Shown here in pieces: positions 9,696-55,739 of a stretch of DNA of 64,000 bases (within the stretch, counting starts at the first letter, position 1; every line of letters starts with the position of its first letter). The notes below the pieces were generated by a model, which saw nothing but the letters and a program-made list of their open reading frames with translations, was not told where the DNA came from and made no database searches. The position numbers and the translations under genes were made by a program. Source of the stretch: Lepidodermella squamata. Taxonomy: Eukaryota > Animalia > Gastrotricha. The stretch covers positions 744,001 to 808,000 of the forward strand of contig JBLDXI010000024.1 of NCBI GenBank assembly GCA_047495785.1, read 5' to 3'.

Positions 9696-9752
9696 CTAGC
9701 TTTTTCCCCAATTTTAAAGCTAAACTATGCGTAATGGCCAAAAATGTACAAC

Positions 9753-9967: not shown

Positions 9968-12098
9968 GCCTTCTTAGTCGAATACACTCTACTGGATATC
10001 ATGGAAAAACTAATCGCAGAAAGAAAAATTAAAATGTGCGTATCGCGTGCTCTTTGAACCAACCAATCACAGACTTTAAACCGCCCGACCAATCAGATAA
10101 TTGTGGATTCACTGGTTCCACTAAGGAGAATAGAGACTGTCAATTCTTTGTTTTCCTTTTAGCCGCTGTGATTGCTTCTAAATCGAGGGCCGTTGAGCAT
10201 TGGAATCCTATTGAGGGCTTTGAAACCACGATTTTCTTACGAATCGGCCGAACAGATCATGGCTATAATGGCTAGACCTTTTCTGCACGCAAGTTTAGGA
10301 TAAGCTACGATTTAAAGCCCATGTTCTGTGGTCTTGTGGGATCTTGAGGCATTTTTCTTGAGGCATGCTTGAGCCTTTCATAACTGACACATTGACTTCT
10401 TGGCTCATCTCATTCTTTCAGACGAATTTCACGCTCGGATGAATAATGGTACCAATATTATCCAGTAATATATTGATTTAATTCCCATTATAGTACGTGC
10501 CGACTGGCGCCAGTCTGTCTCCGGCCTAAAAAACGGTGGGGGTCATGGTCGTTCCGAACTTCGAAAGTCTTTCACTCATTGGAATCCGACAGAGGTAATA
10601 CAGCGCAATGTAGCGCAATAAGGAATAGTGGGCAGGTACCGGGACTGCTGTTAGGCGGAAGCCGACCCCCCGTTTTTCTCTGTTTGTCTTTGGACGCCCG
10701 CGGCAATTACTGGAATTAATATTTTTTGAAATTTTCAAACTTTTCATCTCAAATCTTAAGATTTCTTCTTGAGATTCTTGAGATTCTTGAGACACTACTA
10801 CTTCATTTGATTCGCTAGTGAATTTCTTTAAATTTCTTTAAAGAAGTAACTAAATCCGGTTATAGTTAGAGTGTTGATTGGATTATTACAGGTGGCCGAT
10901 GTGATTTTATTACGTAAATGTCAGCGGTCGTAATCATGAAGTAATAAATTCAATTCAGCGTACACCTGTCTAGTCAAAACTAAGAAATATTCTACCTTGA
11001 CGGCGCTGAGAAACTATACCTCGAACCAATAAACTGGATAAAGAATTCCAATATGAGAAGCTTCGCTAGATACCTAACTGATATCAACAAATGAAGCATG
11101 CTTTTAAGTTTAAGCTGCATATAATTTTTAAATGTTATTGTTCAAGTGCATTTATTCGAGGGTAGTCAATCCAAATGCGGCATGTCTCAAATACGCCTCG
11201 GCTTGTCAGCTTGAGCCATGCACCTTGCAGCATCTTCAATCTTAAAGTTGCTATTAGCCGAAAATCCGATTCGGACTTCAGCAAATTGATCTCGGATAAT
11301 ACAAAGAAACATGCCAAGATACCAAAAATCTTACGTCCGTCTGAGACAGGGCATCACACAGGACATACCCGCTGGAGTTGTAGGAACGGCGGATAGACCG
11401 CGCCAATACTCGCTAGTGTCACACAGTTAATCACATAAAAAACTCATCGTCACGCTGATTGCATGCCCTGAAAGTCGAGCTGGCCTGAATGTATGGCAGG
11501 GTAACTTGCTCAATGCCACAAACACTTGACCGCTTCTGCACCCGAAGTCATGAGTCAGGTGAGAAATTTTTGAGGTCTACTAAATTCCAAGCTGGCTGAT
11601 TAGTTGCCTCTCCAAGCGAGCCAGGCGAAAAGAGTGAAGACGGCAGTCCGTCAAATATCTGAAATTTAGACGAAAGAATGAAAACCTGGTATCCAAATCT
11701 AACACGCCGCGATGATCTGTGAGATTGTTAGCCTCAATTTCCCCTCTGTTATCCAATTTATCAAACTAGGGACCTGCCCATTACGCCACGCTGCAATTGC
11801 AGCCACGCAATTACGCCACGCAGCGTAAGACAATAATTCCAGCGATGAGGAACTTAGATTGCAATCAGATGTGAACCGGCTGGAATCAGAGCGGGAACTC
11901 GTGGTTTGAAAATTGCCACGGTCGACTTGGCAGCCAAAAGTGTATGGCACATTTTTTCCTTAGTCACGTTATTATTATTGGAATTATCATTAAATTATTA
12001 TTTAATTACTGATTTTTGCATGAAATTTATTGACCTTGACGCAACTGTTTACGCGGTATTAATGTAAAGTTGGAAGACCTCTCGTCTGAGTTTTGGAA

Positions 12099-15044
12099 CT
12101 CGGCTACCAGTCAAATTCAAGTTTTAGAAAAAATAACTAGTTTACATGACACTTATTCATCGACTTATGACGTTCCTTTGTTAGTCGGAGACTTCAACAT
12201 AAGAATAGGCAATCAGTCGGAAACCTTAACTGATGACGAAGCTTTCTACCCACTAGCGCCTCGCAGATCCAAGGACACTAGTGTATCCACCTCTAGCGTG
12301 GTCAAACATTTTTTCTCTATGTGTAATCATATGTCCTGTTATGTCGCGAATGGTCGCTGCAGTGGCGACCGTCAAGGCGAATTCACCTTTGTTGGCCACA
12401 ACGGTCAATCCGTGATCGATTACTGTCTCCTTCCTCCAGATTTGCTGGCGAGCAAATTCTCAACTTTTTCTGTTCGCCAGGATATCATTAACTCTGACCA
12501 CTTTCCCATAGCATACTATTTGAAATCAGATGAGATCACATTTAAGCAGACTAGCGCTTCCACGTCTTATACTAAGGTGCACTTCGATTCAGGTGCGTTC
12601 CATAATCACCTTTTAAATACTGACATCGACTCATTTGCGGATAACTTACCTCAAATGCCTAACGATGCTTTGCGCTCTACGCTAGATCTTATCAGTAATT
12701 TTGCCACTAGAGGCCACATCCCTTATGATACTAAAATTATCGAGGCCGACTCGACCCGCCCGGATGTCGGGGATCATGTGAATTTTTGTTTATACAGAAA
12801 ACAAGCTAACGCCTCGCGCAAAATGCGCCGCATATTAAATCGTAACAAGGAAATATCAGTAATCAACAGCGATAAAACTAAACGTTCTCTCTGGGTGGCT
12901 TTCAAAACAGCGCCTCTTTCTCCCCAAAATCAACCGCAGATGCACGAATGGGTCGAATTTTTCGGGGAGCTCTACCGAAATCGGAATGTTGTCTCACCCC
13001 CACTCGAACTCACAACATCAGACCCAATACTGGATGCTCCTTTGACTATTGACGAAGTCAAAATGGCCATAGAACTTCAAAAAGCAGGTAAGGCGCCCGG
13101 CCCGGATGGTATTACAGCTGAATTCATGCAACACAGTGACCTGAATGTTTCTTTTTTCAGCAAGACGCTCTTTAAAATTTTTGAACCGTGTTTCCTTAGC
13201 TACACCCTGCCATCGGGACTAAATTTGTCTCTGTTTTGCACCTTGTTCAAAAAAGGTGACTCCTCTAAGCCGGACAACTACCGGCCATTATCTCTTTTAT
13301 CCGTAATATACAAAACTTATTCTACTATACTGAAATTGAGACTGGAAAAGTGGTGTAGAATTCACTCGATCATACCTGAAGAGCAGTTTGGTTTCGAAAA
13401 AGGATTATCGCGCTTACACGCGGCTTTCGTCCTTCAGTCGTTGGCGACGTACCAAATCCACGTTCGCGGTAGAATGCTCTTTATATGTTTAATCGACTTT
13501 ACTAAAGCTTTCGACTGCGTTCCTCACAACCGTCTTATATGGAAATGCCAGCGATTAGGTATCTCATCTTCCTTTGCCAAGAGATTGAACTCTCTCTATT
13601 CCGACGCTAAAGCCAAAGTGCGAGTTGGCAGCAAACTGTCTATTGCAGACATCGCCATTGAACGCGGTGTTAGACAGGGTGACGTCTTAGGTCCCCTAAT
13701 GTACAATCTGTATACCGCCGATTTGCCTCTTCATCTGGCTGAGAATGCCAAAAATCTATCAGACATTCCTAAGTTACTTTCTACCAAGGTACTTTGCGTA
13801 TTATATGCGGACGACTCCACACCCACTGCAACTAACGCGGTGGATTTGCAAATACAGATTGATGCTATGTCGCCGTATTCTACTAGAGAAGGGCTCAGCC
13901 CTAACCCCGGTAAAACGAAAGTTATCATTTTTTCCCAAGCTCCTGTTTCACCTGACCGTTACTCCTTTAATATGAACGGCGTACCTCTCAAAGTTGTAAA
14001 ATCTGATTTCTACCTAGGCGTACCGATATCCAGCGACTTGAGCTGGTTTGAAGCTATTGAAAATGCGCTTACACGTGGCAATAGCTGTTACAACGCTCTT
14101 TCCTCTCATAGGATCAAATTGAGTATGATAGAACGCAATAACTTGGATACACTATTTTGTAGCAAAATTGAAGCGGCGATGCTTGCAGGCTCCGAACTCT
14201 GGGGCCTCTTCGCCCCTAGCCGTGTTGCTAAATTGGACAGCGTCTGTTATAAGTATTATAAAAGAGCGCGCGACATTCCGTACAATGCGTCTAGTTTATC
14301 AACTGGTTTTGTTATGGGACTTATTCCCCCTAGCCTAAAGGCGAAACTCAATGCAGTCAAGTTTACATGTGAGCTGACGAAATGTGCCAACCCCTTAGTG
14401 AATGATGCTTTTTCTTTTTACTTCCATTCTCGTCCGAAGATGGGTGTCTTAAATCCCATCCACGCAACTCGTAAATTTCTATTATCCTACAATCTGCCTC
14501 CCGACTTCTGGTTTATGCGTGACCCGGCAGTCATGGAGCAATTTTTCAACCTAGTCAAAGACTGCTATGTTTCTGAACTATCTGTCAAATTTCATAATAA
14601 ATATAATGCCAGCTACCTATTAGCCAGGGACGGTTACTTTGGCATTAGTAAGATATTCGAAAATTATCCACCTGACCTTAGAAATACTGCTCTGCGAGTC
14701 GTCACGAACACCGTCTTTCGCCGTATCGAACATTTTATTTTCAGAATTGATGATGTTACATGTATGTTCTGTGGTAACGTTACTCCTCTGAGCCAGTTAG
14801 CCTACCATATTTCTTACGACTGTTTATCTGTTGCTGGCCACGACCCTGCAAGGCTGCTTAGTGCTGACAATAGAATTGTAAAAAATACCTTAATTTTCTT
14901 CAAACGTCTGGAGAAAATAGTTAGCACAGCCATTCAAACTACTGTCTGAGGATTGGCAAATTACCTTTGACAATAGGGCTTTCCTCTGCCCAATGATCTA
15001 ATTTGCTTTCTAGGGATCCTGAGGTTCCCTAGTTATGAGGGCAG
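12099..15044 (+). mobile_element. 5'-truncated non-LTR retrotransposon (APE endonuclease C-half, RT, C-terminal CCHC finger), RTE-X/CR1-group-like
   Basis: Uninterrupted ORF to 14949 with GDFN, IDY, SDH (APE); KAPGPDG, NYRPLSLL, QFGF, DFTKAFD, GVRQGD, YADD (RT); CMFC..H...DC. 11-bp direct repeat GAGTTTTGGAA at 12088-12098 and 15045-15055 is the TSD. Clade assignment tentative. Confidence 0.92.
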
Positions 15045-28004: not shown

Positions 28005-30569
28005 ATGGTTAAGAAAACCCGTGATAGGCGCGATCAGTATTCCAAGCTTGCTCGGGAAAGTGGATACAGATCTCGTGCCGCTTTCAAGCTACTCCAGCTC
28101 GACAGTAAGCTCAAATTTTTGGAACAAGCTCGATGCTGCGTAGATCTTTGTGCTGCTCCTGGTGGCTGGCTTCAGGCTGCAAAAGAACGCATGCCTGGTG
28201 GTACTATGATCATCGGTGTCGATTTAGTCCCAATTCGCCCTCTTCACGGAGTAATTACTTTGCAAGGTGATATTACTACGCAAGAGTGTCGCGCAGCTAT
28301 AATGCGGGAAATGACAAGTTGGCTCGCAGATGTCGTTCTTCATGACGGTTCGCCTAACATCGGCGGTAACTGGCCGCGTGAAGCTTTCGATCAAAACTGT
28401 CTCGTGTTATCTGCTCTTAAATTAGCCGCAGGCATTCTCAAGAAAGGCGGTGCTTTCGTCACTAAAGTTTTCCGTTCCCAAGATTACACTGCTTTACTGG
28501 GGTTATTCCGTCAACTTTTTACAAAAGTTCAGGCCACCAAGCCAGCTGCATCCCGTTCCGAATCTGCCGAAATTTTCGTCGTGTGCCAGGGTTATCAACC
28601 CGTGAAAGGCGAGGCTGCTGCTGAACTATTTGACGTTCAAAAGGTTTTTGCAGTCACTTCAGCTCCTACTCCAAACACGATGGCTCCAACGAGGAGTGGC
28701 GAAGCTGCTGCAGCTGCAGTTCTGCGCGAGCGAAAACGCCTTCATAAGAACCGCGAAGGTTATGAAGATAATACCGCCGGTAATCTGTCCTACGGCGCCC
28801 TTAGTGCTATGAAGTTCGTCATGTGCAACGACGGAACTCATGCTAAATTGATCGCAGAGTCGGGTTCGATCAAGCTGGACGATCCGCGTCTTGCCGATCA
28901 CCCGCTGACGACTGCTGAAATCAGGGAATGCTGCCGTGATGTTCGTGTCATTGGTCGTCGTGAATTACGACTTTTGCTTGCGTGGCGTCGCAAAATGAGC
29001 CGAATGCTGATGCGTGAGGAGAAAAAGAAGGAACAGAAAGAAGCACCGGCTGAGGAGGCCGAAAAAGTAGAAGTTGACGAGGTTGCGGAGGAGGAAGCTC
29101 GGACTAACGCTCAGATTGCTGCTTTGAAAGAAGCGGAGGAAAAGAAGCGAAAGAAAACGCTGAAGAAGCAACGCGAGTCTAAATTAGCAGCGAAGAAGCG
29201 AATGACTGCAGCTCCTGAAGCCGCGAAATTTAAAAGTGTCCATGATCTGCTGCTGGAAGAAGATGGTGGACAAAACGAGTTGTTTTCTCTTCGGCAGCTT
29301 AGATCATCTCAAGATTTGAATGCTGCTCTAGACGACGGAGATGCTGCTCAATTAGCTTCGTCGGAAGAGGAGGAAGACGAAGACGATGATACCTGGGCTT
29401 TGAAGCCACGTCGCAAGACTGTTGCTTACCAACGTGATGAGGATCGCGAATACGCCGACGAAGAACTAGCTCCACCAAAGGCGAGTGAAGAGGAAGATTC
29501 AAAGAAGCAGCGCAAAAAGGAGAAAAAATCGAAGAAGGAGAAGAGGTCGCAAGAAGGAAACGAGGAAGAGGAAGAAGCCGATGATCAACCGGTTGGCGAT
29601 TGTCCCCTTACTGTTTCGATGGAAATGCCGAACGAACGTGATAAGCGTTGCATCAAACAGTGGGAGAGCGCTGTTTCAGATATTGTTAAAGGCAAAAAGG
29701 ATGGTAAAGGTCGTAAGAGACACGAGTCCTCAAGTTCAGACGACGACTCTGACTCGAGTGATGACGATGATGAAGCCGGCTTGGGCGACGAGCTCGAAGA
29801 TTGGGAGCTGGAAGCGATGGCTCGTATCAAGGGCAAGGAGCCTGCCGAAGAAAAACCTGAAAAGCTCGAACCAAAAGTGAAAAAACAGAAAAAGATCAAG
29901 GACGATCTTGAAGACGATGACAGCTCAGATGAGGAAGCAAGCGGAGGTAAGCAGTCGAAAAAGTCGAAGAAATCGGGTAACAATAACCCCGATCTTGACC
30001 CGGTTTCTCTCGCCCTTGGTGCTAAACTGGTGAATAGTCGCAAAACTCGACGTGAAATAATCGAAGCTGGCTACAATCGCTACGCTTTCGGCCCTCATGA
30101 GAATCTACCCGGGTGGTTTATCAACAGCGAAAAAGATCATTATCAACCGAATTTACCTGTTACGCAACAGGAAATTCAAACGTATAAAGATCGTCTGAAG
30201 GCCCTGGATGCCCGGCCTATTAAACGTGTTGCTGAGGCTCGTGCTCGTAAAAAGAGGAAGATGATGGGCAAGATCGACGCTGCTCGCAAAGAGGCTGAGA
30301 AGTTGGCTGATAACGAGCAGATGACTGATGCCGAGAAACAAGCCGCCTTAAAACGGGTCTATCGCGCTGCTCGATCTGCGACTCGTAAGGACAATAAAGT
30401 CACCGTTGTTGTTGCTCGGGGTAAGTCGACGGGTAAACGGACGGTGCGGCCGCCGGGAGTGAAGGGCCGGTACAAGGTTGTCGATACTCGTATGAAGAAG
30501 GACATGCGTGCTGAGAAACGGGCTGCTGCTGGCGGGAAAGGTCGGAAAAAGGGAAAGGGTCGTCGTTAG
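28005..30569 (+). CDS. FTSJ3: pre-rRNA 2'-O-methyltransferase FTSJ3/SPB1, single exon
   Basis: GYRSRAAFKL, DLCAAPGGWLQ, DVVLHDGSPN, FVTKVFRS, SRSESAEIF (K-D-K-E tetrad) and Spb1 C-terminus ARPIKRVAEARARKK, RPPGVKGRYKVVD. Confidence 0.96.
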   Translation: MVKKTRDRRDQYSKLARESGYRSRAAFKLLQLDSKLKFLEQARCCVDLCAAPGGWLQAAKERMPGGTMIIGVDLVPIRPLHGVITLQGDITTQECRAAIMREMTSWLADVVLHDGSPNIGGNWPREAFDQNCLVLSALKLAAGILKKGGAFVTKVFRSQDYTALLGLFRQLFTKVQATKPAASRSESAEIFVVCQGYQPVKGEAAAELFDVQKVFAVTSAPTPNTMAPTRSGEAAAAAVLRERKRLHKNREGYEDNTAGNLSYGALSAMKFVMCNDGTHAKLIAESGSIKLDDPRLADHPLTTAEIRECCRDVRVIGRRELRLLLAWRRKMSRMLMREEKKKEQKEAPAEEAEKVEVDEVAEEEARTNAQIAALKEAEEKKRKKTLKKQRESKLAAKKRMTAAPEAAKFKSVHDLLLEEDGGQNELFSLRQLRSSQDLNAALDDGDAAQLASSEEEEDEDDDTWALKPRRKTVAYQRDEDREYADEELAPPKASEEEDSKKQRKKEKKSKKEKRSQEGNEEEEEADDQPVGDCPLTVSMEMPNERDKRCIKQWESAVSDIVKGKKDGKGRKRHESSSSDDDSDSSDDDDEAGLGDELEDWELEAMARIKGKEPAEEKPEKLEPKVKKQKKIKDDLEDDDSSDEEASGGKQSKKSKKSGNNNPDLDPVSLALGAKLVNSRKTRREIIEAGYNRYAFGPHENLPGWFINSEKDHYQPNLPVTQQEIQTYKDRLKALDARPIKRVAEARARKKRKMMGKIDAARKEAEKLADNEQMTDAEKQAALKRVYRAARSATRKDNKVTVVVARGKSTGKRTVRPPGVKGRYKVVDTRMKKDMRAEKRAAAGGKGRKKGKGRR

Positions 30570-30710
30570 CTCAAATAATAAATTGTGCACTTGTTTCGTG
30601 AATCGCCATTGATTCACGTTTTATTTACTAAATAAAAAGTGTCTTCCAAAGTTGATTTTATCGCTCTATTATCTTTATTTTTCTACCTTGTAGAGATTTT
30701 AAAGATACAA

Positions 30711-33700
30711 ATGTCAGGTGGGCTGTTGGAGGACCTCAACTTCGATCGAGCCGATGAAGACTCGATGGAGCTGGTCGGCAAGATCCAGCTTAAAAAATAC
30801 GGCCAGTTTCTCACGGAATTCGCGCTGAGTTTTCAAGTCGCTCGCGAAGAATTGGTCGATCGAGCACCTCGTCAGACCCTAAATTTACCTATGCGAGTCC
30901 TCGATGTGATTCAATACGAAAGCATATCGTTACTGGAACTAGTATCGAGTGAAAATCGACTGTTTCGAAAAATCATGTTGTCTCTAACTTCGCTATGCTT
31001 CGAAATTCAACAGCTGAAATCAGAGGCTGATATTTTGTTGAATTCTTTCATTTTCTACGGAGAAGCTAAGACCACCCATGAAGAAGCGCTGAAATCAGGC
31101 GAAGCCCAGCAACAAGTCGGCCGAATGTTGGCAGCTTTTCAGCAGCTATCCTCCTTTGTCAATCGAGCTGGCGAAGTGATTCGAGCTGTCATCCAACAAA
31201 TTTCGGCGTTACATGGCGGTCTGAGAAGCCCGCCGAACAATGTGCCGTTCATTGATTCAAATGACCTGCATTTGCTGACTGTTTACGAGCATTTGCTAGA
31301 CTTGCTTGGTTCGCTTGTTTCATTCGACTGCGTTTTGTCGAATCACGCTGTTCTCGAGGAGCAGTGGCAATCTTATCGACGAACCCTAGCTTCTGCCATG
31401 CAAAACCCTGGTAAAGTTGGCGTTGAGGTTGACAGGTACGTTTTGCATTCATTTCACAAATTTCTATAAAAGTAAACGTTTACTATAGACTGCGACCGTT
31501 CGATCGTTATCTGATGCGTTTGAAGGGCCAGCTACTCGATGGCGTTATCCTACAAGTCTGTATCGAACAGGAATACGAAAATGCCGAAGTTTTCGTTAAC
31601 AAGAACCAAAAATTGGCAAAAGAGCTGAAATTCGTCATTCATCGATTGGCTGAACTGCTAATGGAAAGAATTGGCGAGCCGGGCGAAACTGATCACCGCA
31701 ACAAATTCATCGGTCTTTGCGGGCTGATCCTCCTCGATTTTCACCTGTATCGATCGCCTGATAAGAAAACGATGAAGTTCATCTGGAATGTTCACAAGAA
31801 ACTGCCTTTGATTTGCGTTGGCGGCATGTATTTCTTCCAGCCTACTAAATTTCTAGCCACAAAAATTCAAGGCTTGAACAAATTACTGTCGAACAGCGAG
31901 TTGCAAGCTGGCGGAGATGCGGCGCTAACTGCTTGGCTAGTATCGAAAGAGCAGAATTTAGACAAAACAGTGACGTATTGTGAGGCACAGACTGTTAACT
32001 GGCTAGTCCAAGCCGCTCGTGAGTTCGATACCTACTCCATGGAAAAGCAACGCGCCGGCGGGGTTGAGGCTCAACTGGCCCATCGCGCTGAGTTGCTGAT
32101 AGCTGGACTACTCCACGCCTCAGGAATGACCCACTTCATCCGAACACTGCTAACTGCATATGTCGCGGCTAATCGACGTGCTGGAAAAGCGTTGATTCTT
32201 CAACTCTGCCGACTTGTCGAATGTGTGAAGGCCATCGAGAGGATGTATGCAGAAAAAACACTGCAAATTGCGCGTGTTTTGCCCTACATCGTCGAATTTC
32301 TGTCTTATCAGCTTGCTGTTACGCTTCGCACTGTTCGGCGAGAATTTGGTAAGTTTTCCATAAATCGACAAATTTTCAAATAAATGAGTCTGTTTCAGCT
32401 GGTTCTAAAGGCACTGTTGACTTGAAGAAAGCCGATGGCATTGCCGCCTTGCAGTTAGCTGAAGACATGGCAGCTGGACCATTGACACCACAGCGCTTGG
32501 TTGTCATCAAAACTAGCCTCGATTTCGCCTTCAAATTCGTGAGCATTTTTCAAAAATTCCTCCTTAAAATTTTTTAAAATCTTGAATTTTTCAGAATTGT
32601 TTTAATGATGAGCAATTGAAAGCTGTGTATGCACTGGTTCAAAAGCTGTCATCAATTGTTCCGTTATTCAGTGGAATTCGAACTGCTGCTAATCTGGACC
32701 TGCTCTACTGGCACAGGCATGCTTTGTTGACGGTTTTTCTGCGCCACGCCTACGAAAACGGCGAGGATATTCGTCGTCTACCGTTTTTGATCGATGCGCT
32801 TCAAGACGGCTACGTGCCAATTGCAGCGTGTCGTCATCTTGAATCGCCGAATCAGCTGGCTGAATTTTACTTTGACGACGTTTTCGACGTTATCAACGGC
32901 GAGTTGTTGTCCCATTTGTGTACCGACATTGAAAACGACCTGCGAATTTCAACGCATACGCATTTGAAGTTGGACGATCGAAATCCGTTGAAAATGGGCA
33001 TGAAGGACTTGAAGCAATGTATCCGACTGCCGCCTCTGGTTTTCTACAACCGAGTTATCAACGTTAAATCGCACGTCGAACGCCATTTGGATCGAATTTT
33101 CTACAATTTGACGACAGTTGCCCTGCATGATTGGATGACTTACGGCAAAATGAGGTTGCTAGCCAGCTATCGTTACGGCCTTGACCTCGTCGATTCGCAT
33201 CTACCGAGTCAAACGCTGGAACAAGGCATGGATGCGTTGATAATCATGCGTGAAATCGACGCATTTACCGAAAGTTATTTCTACAACTTGAACAATCAAG
33301 TTTTCATTGAAAAGCGGTCGAAAAACAGCTTTTTCAACGTCGTCAACATTCGGCATGTTTCGAACTCGATTCGAACGCACGGCACTGGTATCATGAATAC
33401 CATGGTCAATTATTGCTATCAATTCTTGCGAAACCGGCTGAATGCTTTCGCGCTATTTTTGGCTGATGAGAACATCAAATCGCGATTGATGAAGGATATT
33501 CGGTATTTCCGTGAAAATCACTGGAACAAAGACCAGCGGTACCCCCATGACAGGGCTGACAAGTTCAACAAAGGTAGGAATTTCGCCAGAAATATCCTTC
33601 TTAATTTTTCTAATATTTTTCTTATCAGGTATTCGAAAACTGGGCGTTGAAAACGGGCTGAGTTTTCTCGATAAATTTCGCATGCTGATCACGCATATCG

Positions 33701-36869: not shown

Positions 36870-38264
36870 ATGATTGCTCGCTGGAATTTCTCAAAAGGTA
36901 GAACATTTTTGGAGATTAACTTTTCGTTAATGTTGATTTTTACTAAAGGCTCCGGTTTTTTGGCTGTTCTGGCTATTTCAGCAATCGGAATAGTCTTGCT
37001 CAGCTTCTCAATCTACACCAAAGACAATGCTGACCAAATAGCTGTCGATGAAGTGGCTCCTACGGCTGAAGATAACAATCCTATTCCGATGAAAACTAGT
37101 CATCTACCAATTTATCCGATAATTGACAAGAGCCATCTCAAGAGCAGAAGAATTTCACCGAAATTGACAAGTCATAAAATTCCGACGATTTTATTTTGGA
37201 ATGATATCTACCCGCGCAACAGCGATAGAGCTCTCCCGGTGTCTTTCAGCTCGCAAAAATTGAACTGCTCCTCGGCATATCTCAGACCTGATCAAAAGTG
37301 CTTCTTCACTAGCGACCACAGCTATCTGAAAGACGCTCAAGTTGTCTCGATACAGTATCGCCGTTGGCACCCGAACCAGCCGCCTCCTAAAGTTGACCGG
37401 CCTCCTGGTCAAGTTTGGATGTTTCATATTTGGGAGAGCCCTGATCATGTGTATGACTGGAATTGGAGGGTAAGCAGACAATCGCCAAAATTACTTGAGC
37501 AATGGGCAAATTTTTTCAACTGGACCATGACTTATCGACTCGACTCTACAGTACCTTATGTTTATGGCCAGTTTTTACCTCGGGCCGAGCCTGATTTCAG
37601 TCGAAATTACAACCGACTAGGGAAAAAGAAGAGATCAGCTGTTTGGATGTCTGGCAATTGCGATACATCCTCGCATCGGGAAAATTACCTGAAAGAACTC
37701 GAAAAATCTGGCATCGACGTTGAGATTATTGGCCAGTGTCAAGGAACGCCGAGTATTCTCGTAAAAAACGGCGAGAAAATTTGTCAGCGAACGAGTTTGT
37801 TCAGCACTGAAGAGGAGTGCCATCGCCGCATCGCCTCAACTTACAAATTTTACCTAGCCTTCGAAAATTCCCTCTGCCGAGATTACGTGACTGAAAAGTT
37901 CTACCGGGCTGCTATGCTTGACTTGATACCAGTTGTGTTCAATGGTGCCAATATGTCGCTATTCGCGCCGCCGAATTCCTATATTGACGCGAAGGATTTC
38001 AAGTCACCAAAGGCGTTGGCTGGGTTTTTGAAAAAAGTGGGCTCTGATCCGAAGCTGTACAACTCCTATTTCGCTTGGAAACCCTACTACGACGTCGAGC
38101 ACACCTGGGAAGGCATGACTTACACCAAAAACCTATGTAAATTATGTTCTATGGCTCATGCTGCTGATCGTAAAGGTGTGACAGAAACTACTTCATATTC
38201 CAACCTTGAAGAATGGTGGGTAAAAGGCAAATGCGTTGAAGGACAGTCGACATGGCCTTCTTGA
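36870..38264 (+). CDS. Alpha-1,3-fucosyltransferase (GT10), tandem copy 1
   Basis: Type II TM anchor; WESP, FNWTMTYRLDS, YKFYLAFENSLCRDYVTEK, APPNSYID; one short in-frame intron after the first ~9 codons. Confidence 0.92.
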   Translation: MIARWNFSKGRTFLEINFSLMLIFTKGSGFLAVLAISAIGIVLLSFSIYTKDNADQIAVDEVAPTAEDNNPIPMKTSHLPIYPIIDKSHLKSRRISPKLTSHKIPTILFWNDIYPRNSDRALPVSFSSQKLNCSSAYLRPDQKCFFTSDHSYLKDAQVVSIQYRRWHPNQPPPKVDRPPGQVWMFHIWESPDHVYDWNWRVSRQSPKLLEQWANFFNWTMTYRLDSTVPYVYGQFLPRAEPDFSRNYNRLGKKKRSAVWMSGNCDTSSHRENYLKELEKSGIDVEIIGQCQGTPSILVKNGEKICQRTSLFSTEEECHRRIASTYKFYLAFENSLCRDYVTEKFYRAAMLDLIPVVFNGANMSLFAPPNSYIDAKDFKSPKALAGFLKKVGSDPKLYNSYFAWKPYYDVEHTWEGMTYTKNLCKLCSMAHAADRKGVTETTSYSNLEEWWVKGKCVEGQSTWPS

Positions 38265-38550
38265 TAGAAAGGCTATTTTATTTTATTTTGATTTGCCAAA
38301 TTGTGATATACCTAATTTTTGAAAGAATAAAAGATTCTCCACGAAACTTATTAAGGAATATTTCTTTTCACTCCGTCATTCATTCATGCATTCATTCAGC
38401 TGAAAGCGCTGTCGAATAAAATATTTCTATTTCAAGTCGAAAGAATCCAGGGAAAATAAAGCCATCGGATAATCTGAAAGTATATATCATACATAATTAT
38501 TTATATAAAATGCGCGATTTTGCCAACCAATTTTTATATGGCGTGAGAAT

Positions 38551-39932
38551 ATGGAGCCAAGGTTAACCAAGTACAAAGGTAATAAAACTGCCAATATTCT
38601 GTAATTTTTCCGATATAACCAATTAATTTTCTAGCAACTTTAGCCGCTATTTGCATTTTCACGCTTATTGCAGCGACTTTTCAGCCACCAAAATTTCATG
38701 GCGTAACTGAGTTCGAATCAATAGATACGAATGAGACGTTATTGAATGGCTTCGTAAGCAATAAATCCAATGAGGAACATCGACCAAGTTACCCGGTAAT
38801 ACCGAGCAAAGTTCGCTCTGGATCTGACCAGGCGAAAAGGAAACCGGCAAATCAGACACCCGTCATCCTATTTTGGTCTGATATTCGTCCCGTTTCGCTG
38901 GACCGTTCCCTGCCTCGATCCTACTCATCGCAATTCTTGAATTGCTCTGCGAACTACCTTTCGCCCGATCGCCAGTGTTATTTCACGAATAACAAGAGTT
39001 ATCTAGCGCAAGCTCATGTTGTTTCGCTGCACTATCGCAATTGGAAAATCGACAAACCTCCGCCAAAGGTTGACCGCCCGCCCGGCCAGGTTTGGGTGTT
39101 CAACATTTGGGAAAGTCCTGATCACGTTTACAATTTCGACTGGAAAGCGAGTCGCAAGTACGACAGACTGCTGAAACAATGGTCGGATTTTTTCAACTGG
39201 ACAATGACTTATCGACTCGACTCAACTGTGCCATATGTTTACGGGCGATTCTGGCCTCGAAAGGCGCCGGATTACTCGCGAAATTACGACCGGTTGAAAA
39301 ATAAAACTAAAACAGCTGTTTGGATGTCAGGAAACTGCGATACAGCGTCTCATCGAGAGAAGTACATTCGAAAGATGGAAGAGGCGGGGATTTCTGTCGA
39401 CATAATCGGGCCGTGCAATTACAAAACGTTCTGGTCTGATTCCGAAAGAGCCATTTGCGAAAGGACGGACATTTTCAGCACGACGAATGAATGTCACGAT
39501 TTTATTAGTGAAAATTACAAATTCTATTTAGCCTTCGAGAATTCACTTTGCCGAGATTACGTCACTGAAAAGTTCTACAGAGCCGCCATGCTCGATGTCA
39601 TTCCCGTCGTCTATAATGGCGCCAATATGTCACTATTCGCGCCCCCTCATTCCTATATAGACGCAAAAGATTTCTTTCAACCAGGTGATTTGGCCAATTT
39701 TTTAAAAGACGTCGCGGCCGATCGCGACTTATATAATTCCTACTTCGCCTGGAAGCCCTACTACGACGTCGAACACACTTGGGAAGGCATGACTTATACC
39801 AAAAATCTATGCAAATTATGCTCGATAACTCATGACTACCTGTTGAATGAATTTGTGGACGATAAAAATTATACTGATATAGAAAATTGGTGGATGAACG
39901 AGGGCAAGTGCCATGATGGATTCAGCTCCTGA
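38551..39932 (+). CDS. Alpha-1,3-fucosyltransferase (GT10), tandem copy 2
   Basis: Exon 1 MEPRLTKYK spliced into a TM exon continuing into ORF 38742-39932; same GT10 motifs. Confidence 0.92.
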
Positions 39933-50097: not shown

Positions 50098-50986
50098 CAT
50101 ATCATTTTTGCATAGGTGTCACTAGTCATGACCCTGTCAGCATTTTTAGTAATAATCAGAGCACTTTCAAAAATACCCTTATTTTTTTAAACGCCTAGCC
50201 TTACATGTATCTAGAGCCACAACTATTGTCTAAGGATAGGCAAATTGCCTTCGACACTAGGGCTTTTCTCTGCCCAATGATTGAATTTGCTTCCCTGGGG
50301 ACCCAGTATGAGGGCAGGCAGAGAGGATGTTAGAGATGAATGACATGAGGAGGATGTTAGAAGATCGTCATCTTTTTATCTTTAGGGAAGAGAGAAAGGA
50401 CGGAACACGGGCCCTTACAGCATCCCCTTTGCAAGTATCTATTTTGAAGGCTCGAGATCACTAAATCATGCATGCATTCTGAAGTCTCGGCAAGATGGGG
50501 ACATAGTTTGAAAACCAGCCAACAGAAGAATCGAGCACGTGCTCTTCCTAACTTTTCAAATTTTATTAGCGCCAAGTTTTCACGTAATTAAGGCGAAACT
50601 GATAATAATCGTGATGTAAAACAATTAAAGTTCTAATACATAAAATTGATTTTTGAATTTTTGAATTTTTAGCGCGCATCGCAGCGTGGAGCGTACCTGG
50701 TTACATTCGGTGCTTTCCATCCGGTGACAGCTGAGTACACGCACTGGTAATGGAGGATGGCGTTTGGACCTGGCGGATCCAATACGTGTCGTAAACATAT
50801 GCAATTCTTTCGCTTTTTAAGATTTTTTGAGCTTTTAATAGATGAAATTGCTTTGTAACCTTTTACAGACGATCCTTATTTCTCTGCCCATCTCTTTGAT
50901 CAAACTCCGATCAAATCGATTGACTTTCATTCCATTTATTAGAAATAAAGTTTATAGTACACTCTACATTTATTCATAAACTTTAT

Positions 50987-53900
50987 ATGCGTGAGGTATG
51001 GGAATTTAGTATTATAAGGAATTTTATTTTAAAACTTGTTTCATTTTCCAGGTGGCTCGTAGGCCAGTATCAGAGCTTGATCCCCATGCTGACTCTCGCT
51101 CTTCAAATCTGACAGATTTCCGTCTTGTACTTTCTGAAGTCGTCGGGTCTCAAAGATCTGAGCGCTTTAACATCTTGAAGTCCTATTTTGGCCCTGATCC
51201 TGTTAGCCGATTATGTCTTTCGCTTCAATCATCTCCTGCTTCAGGTTTGAGCAAACTGACAGCTATATTATTTTTGATAAGTTTTATATTCATTAGGTCT
51301 CTCAGTTTCCAATGATCAAATCCTCGCAAGGCGCCTAAGGTTCGGCAAGAATGAGCTGCCTGGCAGCGGGAAAGCTCTTACGTTACCTTTCCTAATTTTC
51401 AATTCGATTCGAGACCCCCTTCTCTTGGTTCTGTTCATCACTTCGCTTTCATCTTTGATTCTGACAATATTGTTTGGAGATGGGAGAAAGTCTAATGATG
51501 GTGATGTCAGAAATGTTTTAATTTTGCGTAACCCTGACCATTTAATTTCTAGATTTAGAGGCGGGTGCTAGTTGGATTGAAGCTGCTGCAGTGATGATTG
51601 TTCTTACCACCTCAATAGTCATATCAGCGTTGATTAACTATCAAAAGGATCAGCAATTTGTTCAACTTCAAAGTCGCCTTGATTCTAATCTACGCTGTGC
51701 AGTCCTGCGACACTCTTCAGTCTTTTTCTTACCTGTCAAGGACATAGTTGTAGGGGATATCTGCCTCTTACAGTGCGGTCAGTGCTAAATCAATTAAACT
51801 CAGCGGTGCAATCATTAATTTCGTCATTTTTTCACATGGCTAGGTGATGTTATTCCTGCTGATGGCCTTGTTACCTACAGCAACGACCTGAAATGCGATG
51901 AAAGTGTTCTGACCGGCGAACCTGAAGTGGCGCTAAAATCGATAAAAGCCGATCCTCTATTGCTGGCCGGTTTGTTTATTTACAGTTTTAGCACAGCTAT
52001 AATGGGCAAGCACATACGCGCGCTCTGCCTACTGCGTTGCGCGGTCTATTTTATTGATTTCAAAAAAATTTGCTGAGCGGAATCTGCAATTGTAAACAAG
52101 TGCCCTCAACACCTTGCTAAAGCAAACTTTTAATTAGGTAGCTTGTCCTTGAATGTCCTCACTTGATAAAAACAAACTAATCTTTTCGTGAGAATAATGC
52201 TGTTATAGAATGCAATTGATTTAATATATAAATTCAGGCACTCAAGTTGTAAGTGGCAGCGGGCGAATGTTAGTGATAGCTGTCGGTGCGAATTCGAGGA
52301 GCGGCCAGATTTTCAAATTATTGCAAAGGATTGTTACTACATCAAATCCCCGAAGGCAGGTGTTGCATAGCATAACCGCTTCCTTTCAACCGGCATGCTG
52401 CTGCAAAGCTGAAGAAAAAGACGATTCTGTGGGCAAAATACCTGCTATTTTTATTGAGGATGTTGAGGATGGAAAATCTGAACCGGTTCAAAGTAACGAA
52501 AAGGAAAATTCGTTATTCCAAGAGCTTGACTCGAGCAGTATTCCGTGGAAATTGGGCCAGATTCACTCGCCGTTACAAGTTCGACTGATGAAGCTTGCCA
52601 TTCGAAATGGCTATATTGGTACTTAGAATAATTATCATGCGACACGTGGAAAATATTTGTCTTTAGGTGCTATCGCAGCTATCGTTACGATTTTGATCCT
52701 TGTGGCGCGGTTTTGTCTTGAGATTTTCGGAACCGAGAACCAACCGTGGTTAATGGGCTATGTACAAATTTTCTTCCGGTTCATCATATTGGGCCTCAGT
52801 TTACTTGTCATATCAGTCCCTGACGGTCTTCCATCAGCTGTAATGCTGACGGTTGCGCATTCAGCGCGGGTAAAGTTGAACATGGCTACGAAATTGCTTA
52901 TTGTAACATTTTTTAAACAGCGAATGGCGCGTGACAAGATTTTGGTGAAAGATATTGAAGCTATTGAAACGTTGGGAAACGTCACAACTATTTGCTGCAC
53001 GAAAACAGGGCTGCTAACTGCTAGCAAAAATATGGCCGTGGTTCAGGTTTTCGTTGCTGGCCATCGATTCAAGCAGGTGGAATTTACAAACATGAAACAA
53101 CTTTGGAGTGAGCGCGGTTTGCCGAAAGTGGCCATCGATCTGATCATTGAAGCTATATGCTTCACAACTAGCCGAACTTCTGTTGTGATACCGGTAAAAT
53201 CTGAAATCGCAATGTGACTTGGTATTTTTTAACCTCATGTATCCTAAGGTATTCAACCAAGCTCAGCCGGAAAAGACCGGAAATCAAACAGATTGCGCGC
53301 TGTTGAGCTTCATTCTTCACTTACTCCCGAGACCCCGGCTGACTGTTCATCGCCAGAGGATGGATAACCCCATTGATATTGTTCGAAATCGCTACTCGGA
53401 GGATTCGATTATCAAACTGTGGCCATTTTGTTCAACCCGCAAGATGGCTGGTATCGCTATCCGGCTATCTGACGGTGCTATTCGTATTTTCGTCTCAGGA
53501 GCTTTTGAATTTGTCTTGGAAAAGTTGGTTTTTCTTTGACTTATCCATTCTAATGATGCATTTATTGGTTTACTAGATGCCGTACGGTTTTGAACAGTGA
53601 TGACGTGCACGAAGAGCCCGATGGCTTCTTGCAAAGGTGTCTAAATGAAGCTGAGCTGATGAGCCGCAACGGGCTGAGAACGATCGGCGTCGCATTTCGA
53701 GACTTTTCACCTGAAAGGTACTTTTGAATTCAAATTTGCACGCATTTAAATTTTTGATTTCAGTGAAATTGACTGGTCAGACGATGATAAAGTGATGTTG
53801 GATTTAACTTGTCTCGGAATTTTCGGCATCAGCGATCCGGTTCGTGATGAAGTCCAGAATGCGGTCAAAACTTGCCGAAAAGCTGGGATTGACATTCGAC

Positions 53901-55120
53901 TAGTGACTGGTGAAAGTCTTGAAACCGCTCGAATCGCCGCAAGTTTGAGCGGCATTATTTCGCCAAAAGATTCAGAGCTACTTGTGCTTAATGGGAAGCA
54001 ACTTGATAAGAGAATAAGAAACCCATCTTCGGGGAAGTACGATCAAAAGCGGTTTGACGAAACTTGGCCAAGATTGCGAATTTTGGCCCGGGCAACACCA
54101 GAAAATCGCCGTTTACTCGTGAAAGGCATCGTAGACTCTGAAATCAACAAAAGCGGCGAAATCGTGGCTGTCGTTGGAAAAAGTCCGGACGATATGTCAG
54201 CCCTAATCGAGTCTAACATCGGCTTTTCAATGGGTCAAATCAGTTCGGAAATTGTCAAAGAAACGTCGGATTTTATACTCGTTGATAACAGTTTGCCAAC
54301 TTTGGTGCGAAGTCTTATTTGGGGCCGCAATATGTATGCAACGATCTCGAAAATTGTGCAATTTCAGTTGACGGCTAACGTTGTTGCGGCTCTTTTTACC
54401 GTTATTGTTGCGGCGATTGTTGAAGATGCCGTCATTACAGCGGTGCAATTGTTGTTTTTAAATTTTATCGTTGACATTTTGGCTTCGTTGGCGCTGTCGA
54501 GCGAAGCTCCATCGACCGATTTTCTCGCCAGTCAGCCGCCATTCGGCTATAAACGCCCACTTGTTACAGCAGTGATGGCGAAAAATATCCTCCTTAACAT
54601 TTTCTATCAACTGAGCGTGCTAATTTTTCTGACTTTTTACGGTGAAAATTTGTTCTTAGTCGAGTCAGGCCGACGGATCCATCTTATTTCGCGGGTTGCC
54701 TACGGCATGCCAACTCAGCATTTCACGGCTGTTTTTAACGTTTTCGCCCTCATGACCTTGCTAAATCTGCTCTGCGCAAGGTGCCTCGAAAATCAGCGCA
54801 ATATTTTCGCAGAAATTCACAGAAACAAAATTTTCATCTGCCTGTGGTTCGGAACGTTGATCAGCGTAGTTTTGGTCGTTCAATTCGGCTCGGTGGTTTT
54901 CAGAACCGCCCCACTCAGCCTCATTACGTGGCTGTGGTGCCTGCCATTCGTAGCTGGGCAATTAGTTTGGCATCAGATTATTGCGACTCTCCCTCTAGAA
55001 CGGAGCTACACTTTCAAACGCTGGTTTTGTTCGATTAGTGATGAATCATCACAGGTAAAAAATGACCAGCAGCCGAATAACGAGGCTAAAAACAGAAAAA
55101 TATATCTCATCGATTGTTGA
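50987..55120 (+). CDS. PMCA (P2B Ca2+-ATPase)-like protein with degenerate catalytic motifs, ~11 exons
   Basis: PMCA landmarks FGKNELP, WIEAAA, DIVVGDIC, GDVIPADG, GNQTDCALL, GLRTI, DPVRDEV..AVKTC.KAGI, WPRLRILAR, WGRNMY..I.K..QFQLT.NV, PTQHFT.VFN.F. All exons join in frame through GT-AG introns. DKTGT reads TKTGL. Confidence 0.9.
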
Positions 55121-55262
55121 CATTTCCTGATATCTACCTCTTTCAGTATTGTTCTGACTAATATTTTCGGAAAAAGTTGTGAATCACTGGCAATATTATT
55201 TTCTAATGAAATAAAGCGATTATTTTGTTCGAAAAATTGCAAAATTGTTTATTTGTTGAAAA

Positions 55263-55739
55263 TTATTCGTCGCATGTGTGACATTTTTCAGGAGGTATGC
55301 CCATAAAATAAGTTGGAATAATATGAACTAGGGTCACAGTAGATAAGGCGACGCAGTTGAGTACGACCTGAGCCAGCTTAATGTGCGAATAGTCCTGCGT
55401 TACCTCGTAGATGGCGAGTGCTACAACGGCGATGTTGAGTAGAAGCACGAAAAGGCTGGCGACGAACTTGAATCGAGCAACAGACGACTTTCGAAGATCG
55501 TTTCTTGTTGCTTTCATCGCTTGAGAGAAATTTGAGGCTAGTGTTAACACTCCGGTTTGAACGCCGTGGGTGACACCGCCAACACCGCCAATTATAGCAG
55601 ATCCTGACTTTCCAATAACATCGCCGACGCCGCCGATTATCGCGGTCCCGGATTTTCCTATAACACCGCCCACTGTCATAATAGCTGCCGCAGCTATGTT
55701 AGGTTGATGCTGATTTTGACTTGACGTCGAAGCAGCCAT
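55263..55739 (-). CDS. Unknown 158-aa membrane protein with a Gly-rich 15-aa tandem repeat and two C-terminal TM helices
   Basis: Single ORF from ATG; G(G/D)VIGKSG(T/S)AIIGGV x2; hydrophobic segments FVASLFVLLLNIAVVALAIY and VVLNCVALSTVTLVHIIPTYF. Confidence 0.6.
   Translation of the reverse strand: MAASTSSQNQHQPNIAAAAIMTVGGVIGKSGTAIIGGVGDVIGKSGSAIIGGVGGVTHGVQTGVLTLASNFSQAMKATRNDLRKSSVARFKFVASLFVLLLNIAVVALAIYEVTQDYSHIKLAQVVLNCVALSTVTLVHIIPTYFMGIPPEKCHTCDE

What the first reader, a model, noticed from the sequence alone, without database searches (positions are those of the whole stretch)
50987..55120. Intact but catalytically dead PMCA-type P-type ATPase (pseudo-pump)
Seen: ~11 exons splice in frame with no stop or frameshift, yet the phosphoacceptor motif ICSDKTGTLT reads ICCTKTGLLT (Thr codon ACG at 52999-53001, more than one substitution from any Asp codon). 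Other catalytic motifs have decayed in parallel: KGASE to SGAFE, MVTGDN to LVTGES, SPTDK to TPENR, TGDGTND to VGKSPDD, TGES to TGEP, and M4 PEGL to PDGL. The membrane domain is well kept (M5 QFQLTANV, M6 QLLFLNFIVDILASLAL with its Asn/Asp ion ligands), and the chain ends soon after M10 without a recognisable calmodulin-binding tail. Established: the DKTGT Asp is obligatory for P-type pumping. Inference: a pseudoenzyme retained for another role, such as scaffold, regulator of active PMCA, ion sensor or passive conduit.
Basis: partly seen in the sequence, partly recalled or inferred. Interest (0 to 1): 0.85.

Follow-up and report, generated by a model that had tools for sequence, protein, structure and literature searches.

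The report
Dead PMCA-like calcium pump gene
An unidentified small invertebrate keeps, under strong natural selection, an intact gene for a plasma-membrane calcium pump look-alike that has lost the residues needed to burn ATP. It therefore almost certainly does something other than pump.

Summary
Window 50987-55120 (+) splices through 11 GT-AG exons into an uninterrupted 1128-aa protein. Its best solved relatives are human PMCA2 and PMCA1 (E 1e-112 for the last exon).

The phospho-acceptor Asp is Thr474 (ACG, 52999-53001). The Asp of TGDN, the first Asp of GDGxND, the DK Lys and the KGAxE Lys are also replaced. The calmodulin tail is absent. No other DKTG-coding stretch exists in the 64 kb.

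It is not a decaying pseudogene. Two haplotypes in a DNA run differ by 21 synonymous changes, 3 conservative replacements, 15 intron changes and 4 indels, all of them intronic. That gives pN/pS about 0.05 (P = 1.7e-8). Both haplotypes carry the Thr codon.

An intact 1099-aa relative lies on a metagenome scaffold. All six of its introns sit at the same position and phase, and the two genes form a long-stemmed clade. That relative has lost a different subset of catalytic and ion-site residues, so catalysis was probably already dispensable in their common ancestor.

I found no usable RNA evidence, and the function is untested. Dead P4-ATPase modules are published. I found no paper describing a free-standing dead PMCA. 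Public databases hold other degenerate PMCA-likes (whitefly, sea anemone, feather star).

The parts
50987..50995 (+). Exon 1, a 9-nt mini-exon (Met-Arg-Glu). This is an inferred start.
   Evidence: Exon 2 has no in-frame ATG. The donor GAG|GTATGG is good. Not supported by RNA.
51052..51244 (+). Exon 2, the N-terminal segment.
   Evidence: GT-AG borders, and aligns to the PMCA N-terminus. The intron after it sits at the same column and phase as in L001g.
51297..51500 (+). Exon 3: Cation_ATPase_N and M1.
   Evidence: Pfam PF00690, E 2.7e-6.
51553..51777 (+). Exon 4: M2 and the start of the A domain.
   Evidence: Alignment to PMCAs.
51844..51969 (+). Exon 5: A domain with TGEP (51912-51923) in place of TGES. 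The Glu is kept.
   Evidence: Pfam PF00122; alignment; coordinates.
52238..52618 (+). Exon 6: rest of the A domain, the divergent linker and the pre-M3 helix RLMKLAIR (52582-52605). Basic residues are kept at two positions of the PMCA PtdIns(4,5)P2 pocket (Lys to Arg368; Lys371), and the pocket Gln is Arg375.
   Evidence: Alignment to the canonical PMCA P0001. Pocket residues K344/K347/Q351 come from PMC12488499. The mapping is inferred from an ungapped extension of the alignment.
52667..52869 (+). Exon 7: M3-M4 with PDGL (52819-52830). Asp432 stands on the Ca2+-ligand Glu.
   Evidence: Aligned to hPMCA1 381-447, E 2.4e-10. E433 of hPMCA1 is named as the ligand in PMC6127144.
52921..53193 (+). 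Exon 8: phosphorylation loop ICCTKTGLLT (52990-53019). Thr474 is ACG at 52999-53001.
   Evidence: Aligned on ICSDKTGTLT of PMCA2 and PMCA1. The codon is the same in both haplotypes of run X1.
53249..53523 (+). Exon 9: N domain. The adenine-stacking Phe motif FCSTRK is kept. SGAFE (53495-53509) stands in place of KGAxE.
   Evidence: Pfam PF13246, E 1.6e-8; alignment.
53577..53717 (+). Exon 10: end of the N domain (GLRT kept, 53671-53682).
   Evidence: Alignment. The intron before it sits at the same column and phase as in L001g.
53764..55120 (+). Exon 11: the C-terminal half of the P domain with LVTGES (53900-53917), TPENR (54095-54109) and VGKSPDD (54173-54193). It also holds M5 QFQLTANV (54359-54382), M6 LNFIVDILAS (54458-54487), M7-M10, a 38-aa tail and the TGA stop.
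   Evidence: E 1.1e-112 to PMCA2 and 3.5e-111 to PMCA1. Pfam PF00689, E 2.3e-25.
55210..55215 (+). AATAAA poly(A) signal, 90 nt after the stop.
   Evidence: Pattern scan. This is sequence only.

Best explanation
This is a real, selectively maintained gene for a full-length protein derived from a plasma-membrane Ca2+-ATPase (P2B). The protein can no longer form the aspartyl-phosphate intermediate, so it cannot pump.

It belongs to an old, fast-evolving side branch of animal PMCAs. That branch had probably already dispensed with catalysis in the common ancestor of this gene and its one known relative. Both lack the Asp of TGDN, an intact GDGxNDxP loop and the calmodulin tail. Each has since lost a different further set of catalytic residues.

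Shown: the fold-level homology, the substitutions, purifying selection that includes the 'dead' cytoplasmic headpiece, and the existence of the family.

Inferred: the protein works non-catalytically, through binding rather than turnover. My best guess is a regulatory or scaffolding membrane subunit. In this species it can probably still bind Ca2+ at the single PMCA membrane site (Asp432, Asn910 and Asp914, with Gln878, Asn882 and Ser918 also kept). It may still sit in PtdIns(4,5)P2-containing membrane.

I put about 0.85 on 'selected, non-pumping PMCA derivative'. I put about 0.4 on the specific binding/scaffold mode of action. The single confidence figure given (0.6) is a compromise between the two.
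For: - Intact 11-exon ORF.
- Best solved relatives are PMCA2 and PMCA1, with Thr on the catalytic Asp and Glu, Lys and Arg on other essential residues.
- No second DKTG-coding stretch in any frame of the 64 kb.
- Two haplotypes in DNA run X1 differ by 21 synonymous, 3 conservative non-synonymous and 15 intron substitutions, and all 4 indels are in introns. Under neutrality 16.3 of the 24 coding changes would be non-synonymous; P(3 or fewer) = 1.7e-8. pN/pS is 0.05, and pS (0.12) is close to the intron divergence (0.09).
- Most of these sites lie in exons 7-9, that is M3-M4, the phosphorylation loop and the N domain, so the dead headpiece is itself constrained.
- L001 carries an intact 1099-aa relative. 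All 6 of its introns are at the same alignment column and phase.
- The two genes form a clade with SH-aLRT 99 and a stem of 0.59 substitutions per site.
- At 170 columns that are at least 90% conserved in 29 canonical PMCAs, 39 are changed in both genes (about 20 expected if the changes were independent). These are concentrated in the P-domain loops and M4.
- All 14 canonical-invariant A-domain columns are kept, against 56% in the C-terminal P domain.
Against: - There is no evidence of transcription or splicing. The only possibly-RNA run (X2) gives short low-depth fold-back contigs, and one runs 4 nt into intron 8, so it may be amplified DNA.
- The selection test rests on the 40 of 74 differences that the tool listed, and mostly on exons 7-9.
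- The relative L001g has lost both acidic Ca2+ ligands (PNGL in M4; Asp to Ala in M6). Ca2+ binding therefore cannot be the family's common function.
- L001g keeps the catalytic Asp, so 'dead in the ancestor' is an inference from other lost residues.
- With only two members, orthology cannot be told from old paralogy.
- Nothing here bears directly on binding partners.
Confidence: 0.6

Rival explanations
1. It is a passive or secondary ion pathway. The membrane domain keeps the Ca2+/H+ site and counter-ion pathway residues, and works as an ATP-independent Ca2+ or H+ conduit or exchanger.
For: Asp432, Gln878, Asn882, Asn910, Asp914 and Ser918 match PMCA2 E412 (as Asp), Q837, N841, N869, D873 and S877. 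The paper names these as the Ca2+ site, the PtdIns(4,5)P2 latch and the proton pathway. M5-M10 is the longest well-kept region, at 47-48% identity.
Against: P-type pumps have alternating access with no open through-path unless both gates fail, and nothing here shows that. The family relative lacks both acidic ligands. Selection is just as strong on the cytoplasmic exons, which a bare conduit would not need.
Confidence: 0.12
2. It is a young pseudogene or a decaying duplicate that has not yet acquired a stop codon.
For: Many catalytic motifs have decayed at once, and the branch is long.
Against: pN/pS is 0.05 between haplotypes at silent divergence of about 0.12, and all indels are intronic. 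The 3.4-kb ORF is intact. An intact relative exists at more than 1 substitution per site.
Confidence: 0.03
3. It is still an ATP-driven pump. Either the model misses an exon or an edit that restores Asp, or Thr474 serves in some unconventional chemistry.
For: The A-domain TGE Glu and all 14 invariant A-domain columns are kept. The N-domain Phe and Arg are kept.
Against: No other DKTG or KTGxLT stretch exists in six frames of 64 kb. ACG is three changes from an Asp codon. The Mg2+-binding Asp of GDGxND is Lys, the Asp of TGD is Glu and the KGAxE Lys is Ser. By established P-type and HAD chemistry, a Thr cannot form the acyl-phosphate.
Confidence: 0.03
4. It is an assembly or sequencing artefact at the active-site codon.
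For: None found.
Against: Contigs of run X1 cover the site in two haplotypes. They differ at 52989 and 52992 but not at 52999-53001.
Confidence: 0.01

Closest known systems
Plasma-membrane Ca2+-ATPases (PMCA, ATP2B, P2B-type P-type ATPases), e.g. human PMCA1 (6A69) and PMCA2 (9GSD)
   Same: The domain order is the same: N-terminus, M1-M2, A, M3-M4, P/N, M5-M10. Identity is 45% over the last 451 residues. It has the single site-II-type Ca2+ site, with Ala at the SERCA E771 position as in PMCAs. The M5 Gln/Asn latch residues and the M6 Asn/Asp/Ser are kept.
   Different: Thr stands in place of the phosphorylated Asp. TGDN is TGES. GDGTND is GKSPDD. The DK Lys is Arg. The KGAxE Lys is Ser. PEGL is PDGL. 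There is no calmodulin-binding tail. The branch is very long: 1.13 against 0.17 for a canonical insect PMCA.
L001g, an unannotated gene on ENA metagenome scaffold ERZ23486787 scaffold_2056 (fragment P0002)
   Same: It is the sister in the tree (99). All 6 of its introns match in position and phase. It shares the derived changes VTGES, CC-x-KTG, FGISD, RA-x-PE, EDAVI, QLL-x-LNF, WHQ and the short tail.
   Different: It keeps the catalytic Asp, the KGAPE Lys, the DK Lys and the first Asp of GDGxND. It has lost the TGES Glu (TGRS), the M4 Glu (PNGL) and the M6 Asp (Ala). Identity to the window protein is only 30-42%.
P4-ATPase module of the alveolate/stramenopile guanylate cyclases (P4GC)
   Same: This is a published case of a P-type ATPase module whose DKTGT Asp and A-domain Glu are replaced in some lineages while the fold is kept (PMC13466520).
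   Different: It is a different subfamily (P4 flippase). It is fused to a cyclase rather than free-standing, and it occurs in protists rather than animals.
Other degenerate PMCA-like proteins in public databases: Bemisia tabaci XP_018902399, Nematostella vectensis EDO44517, Anneissia japonica XP_033104420
   Same: They are PMCA-length proteins auto-named as PMCA-like, with a broken GDGxND loop. In two of them Asn stands in place of the catalytic Asp.
   Different: They do not group with the window gene and share only 1-3 of its 12 family-specific substitutions. They look like separate losses. I did not study them further.

Membership tests
P-type ATPase superfamily (as an enzyme) | DKTGT motif with the phosphorylated Asp | tested here: not met
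   The motif reads CCTKTGLLT. Thr474 aligns on D454 of PMCA2 and D475 of PMCA1.
P-type ATPase superfamily (as an enzyme) | TGDN and GDGxNDxP loops of the P domain (Mg2+/phosphate binding) | tested here: not met
   VTGES stands for VTGDN, and VGKSPDDMS stands for TGDGTNDGP.
P-type ATPase superfamily (as an enzyme) | A-domain TGES dephosphorylation motif | tested here: inconclusive
   The motif is TGEP. The Glu is kept and Ser is replaced by Pro.
P-type ATPase superfamily (as an enzyme) | N-domain nucleotide-binding residues (Phe, the KGAxE Lys, Arg) | tested here: inconclusive
   The Phe (FCSTRK) and the Arg (GLRT) are kept. The Lys is Ser621. The roles of these residues come from established SERCA knowledge.
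P-type ATPase superfamily (by descent and fold) | Homology over the A, P, N and 10-TM domains | tested here: met
   Pfam hits PF00690, PF00122, PF13246 and PF00689 across the exons. PDB E-values are 1e-112, 1.7e-7 and 2.4e-10.
PMCA / P2B subfamily | Groups with animal PMCAs rather than SERCA, SPCA or Na,K-ATPases | tested here: met
   PMCA2 and PMCA1 score 380 and 375 bits. That compares with 223 for plant ACA8, 122 for SPCA and 91 for SERCA. It falls inside the starred metazoan PMCA set in the tree.
PMCA / P2B subfamily | A single Ca2+ site (M4 Glu, M6 Asn and Asp) with site I abolished | tested here: met
   Asp432 (a conservative change for Glu), Asn910 and Asp914 are present. Ala885 is at the SERCA E771 position and Val913 is at the T799/M872 position.
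PMCA / P2B subfamily | C-terminal calmodulin-binding autoinhibitory domain | tested here: not met
   There is no PF12424 hit. The chain ends 38 residues after M10 and has no counterpart of the ILWIRGLTRLQTQ segment of canonical P0001.
PMCA / P2B subfamily | Obligatory neuroplastin/basigin-type subunit | not testable with these tools
   This needs the genome's Ig-domain proteins and biochemistry. The subunit is described in PMC6127144.
Pseudoenzyme (selected, non-catalytic relative of an enzyme) | Loss of catalytic residues together with purifying selection | tested here: met
   pN/pS is 0.05 (P = 1.7e-8), and all indels are in introns.
Pseudoenzyme (selected, non-catalytic relative of an enzyme) | Expression of the protein | tested here: inconclusive
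   No run on record as RNA holds the gene. The X2 contigs are ambiguous.

The most novel reading that the evidence does not exclude
The protein is a new kind of Ca2+-handling device built from a pump chassis. Its intact membrane Ca2+/H+ site and PtdIns(4,5)P2 pocket would then work without ATP, as a Ca2+/H+ carrier or as a membrane Ca2+ sensor. The still-constrained A, N and P domains would relay occupancy to partners. They might be switched by kinase phosphorylation of Thr474 or Thr476 in place of autophosphorylation. If so, the recurrent dead PMCA-likes in whitefly, sea anemone and feather star would mark an overlooked functional class.
Probability: 0.12. Interest if true: 0.85.

Novelty: new variant of a known kind. 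Interest (0 to 1): 0.58.

Why it matters
P-type ATPases are textbook obligate enzymes. Seven literature searches found no described free-standing animal pump that has lost its phosphorylation site yet is kept by selection. The nearest precedent is the degenerate flippase module of protist guanylate cyclases.

This gene and its relative are a natural experiment. They show which parts of a PMCA matter when pumping is gone: the A domain, the headpiece fold, M5-M10 and, in this species, the Ca2+ site.

They also give a concrete handle on the long-discussed pump-independent (scaffolding or signalling) roles of PMCAs and Na,K-ATPases. Similar degenerate PMCA-likes sit unremarked in annotated genomes, which suggests the phenomenon is wider than this one animal.

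Tried and rejected
- RNA evidence. Two run searches found no run on record as RNA. Laying X1-X3 gave only DNA-like contigs for X1. For X2 it gave short fold-back contigs that could be amplified DNA. X3 gave nothing. No splice joint was seen, so expression stays open.
- Closer orthologues. An exhaustive HMMER search of 1.84 billion representatives with exon 11 found nothing above 45% identity.
- Word-indexed searches with exon 11 and with the exon 11 + P0002 profile found only canonical PMCA fragments and P0002. That tool's length filter (0.55-1.75 times the query) means full-length kin of about 1100 aa could not be seen. The spliced protein has no reference, so it could not be submitted whole.
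- Two JGI metagenome scans found no relative.
- ESM Atlas gave only generic Ca2+-ATPase clusters.
- Synteny between L001 and the window: none beyond the gene itself.
- A conserved element in the shared long intron: none, with an alignment score no better than shuffles.
- An alternative DKTG exon: none.
- Organism identity. Rfam found only tRNAs and Atlas was uninformative. For Spb1/FTSJ3 the best hit is an unnamed metagenome protein at 61% identity. The best named hits are molluscs and a brachiopod at 40-49%. No rotifer appears among the 120 listed, so the 'rotifer' guess in earlier notes is not supported here.
- Structure prediction was not run. Only exon-sized pieces can be submitted, and the outcome (a PMCA fold) would not discriminate between the explanations.
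Full report
**Anatomy.** I read window 50500-55600 and translated it in three frames. The reading frames join through ten introns, all GT..AG. Nine are 46-66 nt long and one is 268 nt. The result is a 3387-nt coding sequence: 1128 codons plus TGA, with no internal stop. The exon coordinates are listed under parts.

Exon 1 is a 9-nt ATG mini-exon. It is inferred only because exon 2 has no in-frame ATG and the donor site is good. An AATAAA lies 90 nt after the stop. tblastn of the model against the window finds this single copy only.

**What it resembles.**
- Pfam finds Cation_ATPase_N, E1-E2_ATPase, Cation_ATPase and Cation_ATPase_C along the exons. It does not find the PMCA C-terminal calmodulin-binding domain.
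- Against all PDB chains, the last exon (451 aa) scores E 1.1e-112 with human PMCA2 (9GSD and others) and 3.5e-111 with PMCA1 (6A69). This is far above plant ACA8, SPCA, SERCA and the Na,K-ATPases.
- Exon 8 aligns Thr474 on the phosphorylated Asp of both PMCAs.
- Exon 7 aligns PDGL on PEGL.

| Canonical motif | In this gene | Note |
|---|---|---|
| ICSDKTGTLT | ICCTKTGLLT | ACG at 52999-53001, three changes from an Asp codon |
| KGAxE | SGAFE | |
| MVTGDN | LVTGES | |
| SSPTDK | ATPENR | |
| TGDGTND | VGKSPDD | |
| TGES | TGEP | |
| PEGL | PDGL | |

In the membrane domain, the residues that the PMCA structure papers name are kept, apart from Glu to Asp in M4. For PMCA1 these are E433, N891 and D895. 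For PMCA2 they are E412, N869 and D873, plus Q837, N841 and S877 of the latch and proton path. The model has Asp432, Gln878, Asn882, Asn910, Asp914 and Ser918. Site I is absent, as in PMCAs (Ala885).

No other stretch coding DKTG or KTGxLT exists in any frame of the 64 kb. An alternative or mutually exclusive exon that restores Asp is therefore excluded within the window.

**Is it a pseudogene?** No run on record as RNA holds the gene. I laid three runs on 50700-55400.

- Run X1 is DNA-like. It covers everything at about 108x where the contigs are collapsed and about 50x + 60x where two haplotypes separate.
- The listed differences between haplotypes, or between X1 and the window, are 39 substitutions and 4 indels.
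- Against my exon model, 21 substitutions are synonymous, 3 are conservative replacements (Val468Ile, Ala486Thr, Val492Ile) and 15 are intronic.
- All four indels (52205, 52908, 53246, 53562) lie in predicted introns.
- I placed the same base changes at random on the covered exons. That gives 16.3 expected non-synonymous changes out of 24, and P(3 or fewer) = 1.7e-8.
- For exons 7-9, pS is 0.124, pN is 0.0065 and the ratio is 0.05. The introns differ by 0.09.
- Neither haplotype differs at 52999-53001, although they differ at 52989 and 52992.

So the gene has been under strong purifying selection since the haplotypes split, and this includes the phosphorylation loop and the N domain. The pattern also supports the exon borders independently.

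Two caveats apply. The tool showed 40 of 74 differences, and most of them fall in exons 7-9.

Run X2 is only guessed to be RNA. It gives 83-160-nt contigs at depth 1-8 with fold-back joints, and one piece enters intron 8 by 4 nt. I treat it as uninformative.

**Relatives.** An exhaustive HMMER search of 1.84 billion cluster representatives with exon 11 found nothing above 45% identity. The best hit is a canonical insect PMCA. I screened the 150 best hits at the motif columns.

One hit, P0002, is a 553-aa fragment from an ENA metagenome, and it shares VTGES. Its scaffold (L001) holds a complete gene. I assembled it from seven GT-AG exons into 1099 aa with no stop. I call it L001g.

- All six L001g introns sit at the same alignment column and phase as introns of the window gene. 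This includes the one long intron (210 against 268 nt).
- In a PMSF maximum-likelihood tree of 36 PMCAs, the two genes are sisters (SH-aLRT 99) on a stem of 0.59. Their terminal branches are 1.13 and 1.36, against 0.17 for the insect PMCA.
- They share derived substitutions at 12 columns that are at least 90% conserved in 29 canonical PMCAs. They differ from the consensus at 39 such columns in all, where about 20 would be expected by chance. These columns are concentrated in the P-domain loops and M4.

L001g has lost a different set of residues from the window gene:

| Feature | Window gene | L001g |
|---|---|---|
| Catalytic Asp | lost (Thr474) | kept (CCDKTG) |
| KGAxE Lys | lost (Ser621) | kept (KGAPE) |
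| DK Lys | lost (Arg792) | kept |
| First Asp of GDGxND | lost (Lys816) | kept |
| TGES Glu | kept (TGEP) | lost (TGRS) |
| M4 Glu | Asp432 | lost (PNGL) |
| M6 Asp | kept (Asp914) | lost (Ala) |

Two lineages discarding different essential residues, on top of shared losses, is what one expects if catalysis was already dispensable in their ancestor. It also shows that the intact Ca2+ site is a feature of this species' protein, not of the family.

By domain, the window protein keeps all 14 canonical-invariant A-domain columns. It keeps 85% in the N domain, 70% in M5-M10 and only 56% in the C-terminal P domain.

Further searches found no third member. The length filter of the word-indexed search means full-length annotated kin could have been missed.

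**Organism.** It remains unidentified. The window also holds Spb1/FTSJ3, a WASH-complex subunit, two GT10 fucosyltransferases, a reverse-transcriptase ORF and four tRNAs. For Spb1 the best hit is an unnamed metagenome protein at 61% identity, with the same Spb1-WASH neighbourhood (L002). The best named hits are bivalves and a brachiopod at 40-49%. This is a protostome from a poorly sampled group.

**Mechanism.**

Established knowledge:
- P-type ATPases pump through an aspartyl-phosphate on the DKTGT Asp.
- The GDGxND and TGD Asp residues hold Mg2+ and phosphate.
- The TGES Glu drives dephosphorylation.

Shown here:
- Those residues are gone.
- The gene is nonetheless constrained, its cytoplasmic domains included.

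Inferred:
- The protein acts by binding, not turnover.
- I favour a regulatory or scaffold role in the plasma membrane.
- Ca2+ binding at the membrane site is retained in this species, and PtdIns(4,5)P2 binding may be. Arg368 and Lys371 keep basic residues at two pocket positions, and Arg375 replaces the pocket Gln. This mapping is inferred.

A passive conduit is less likely. Selection on the headpiece is as strong as elsewhere, and the relative lacks the ion ligands.

**Comparison with the literature.** Seven full-text searches found no paper on a free-standing P-type ATPase pseudoenzyme or a dead PMCA. The nearest precedent is the P4-ATPase module of the alveolate/stramenopile guanylate cyclases. 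Its DKTGT Asp and LDGET Glu are replaced in several lineages (PMC13466520).

Public databases already hold other degenerate PMCA-like proteins, all auto-named as PMCAs: Bemisia tabaci XP_018902399, Nematostella vectensis EDO44517 and Anneissia japonica XP_033104420. They do not share the family's derived residues and look like separate losses.

**Verdict.** This is a new variant of a known kind: a selected, non-pumping PMCA derivative that defines a small divergent family. Expression and function remain untested.

Noticed in passing
P0008, P0034, P0099 (database proteins): Three annotated animals carry PMCA-length proteins with broken catalytic motifs, all auto-named as PMCA-like. Bemisia tabaci XP_018902399 has CCDKTGVLT and IGRETRD. 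Nematostella vectensis EDO44517 has CCNKTGVLT, VTGAS and VASGVHD. Anneissia japonica XP_033104420 has LTNKTGVIT and TGRYIGD, with PSFL in M4. They look like independent losses.
   Followed up: partly
window 52625-53383 and 54415-54499 (run X1): Silent-site divergence between the two haplotypes is very high: about 0.12 at synonymous sites and 0.09 in introns, plus intron indels. This is useful for selection tests on any gene of this genome.
   Followed up: partly
window 51970-52237; L001 4034-4243: The only long intron of the gene (268 nt, against about 50 nt for the others) is at the same position and phase in the distant relative (210 nt). No sequence conservation between the two was detectable.
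   Followed up: yes
window 28005-33650; L002 4101-8326: A single-exon Spb1/FTSJ3 gene is followed by a WASH-complex subunit gene. The same neighbourhood occurs on an ENA metagenome contig (ERZ27332993) whose Spb1 is 61% identical. That contig probably comes from the nearest sampled relative of this animal.
   Followed up: partly
window 12070-14949: A 959-aa uninterrupted ORF with a reverse-transcriptase domain (RVT_1, E 1.8e-26). It is probably a retroelement.
   Followed up: no
window 9148-9825: A cluster of four tRNA genes within 700 nt, three on the + strand and one on the - strand.
   Followed up: no
window 36870-39932: Two tandem GT10 fucosyltransferase genes, each a single long ORF.
   Followed up: no
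window 53134-54856 (run X2): Every X2 contig on this gene is a fold-back (opposite-strand joint about 100 nt apart) at depth 1-8, while the neighbouring gene at 55305-55400 has depth 53. This looks like amplified DNA or a hairpin-primed library rather than ordinary RNA-seq. Its label as RNA should not be trusted.
   Followed up: partly
L001 14887-16994: The metagenome scaffold that carries the relative also holds ABC-transporter ORFs (ABC_tran, ABC2_membrane) on the minus strand. It shows no synteny with the window.
   Followed up: no
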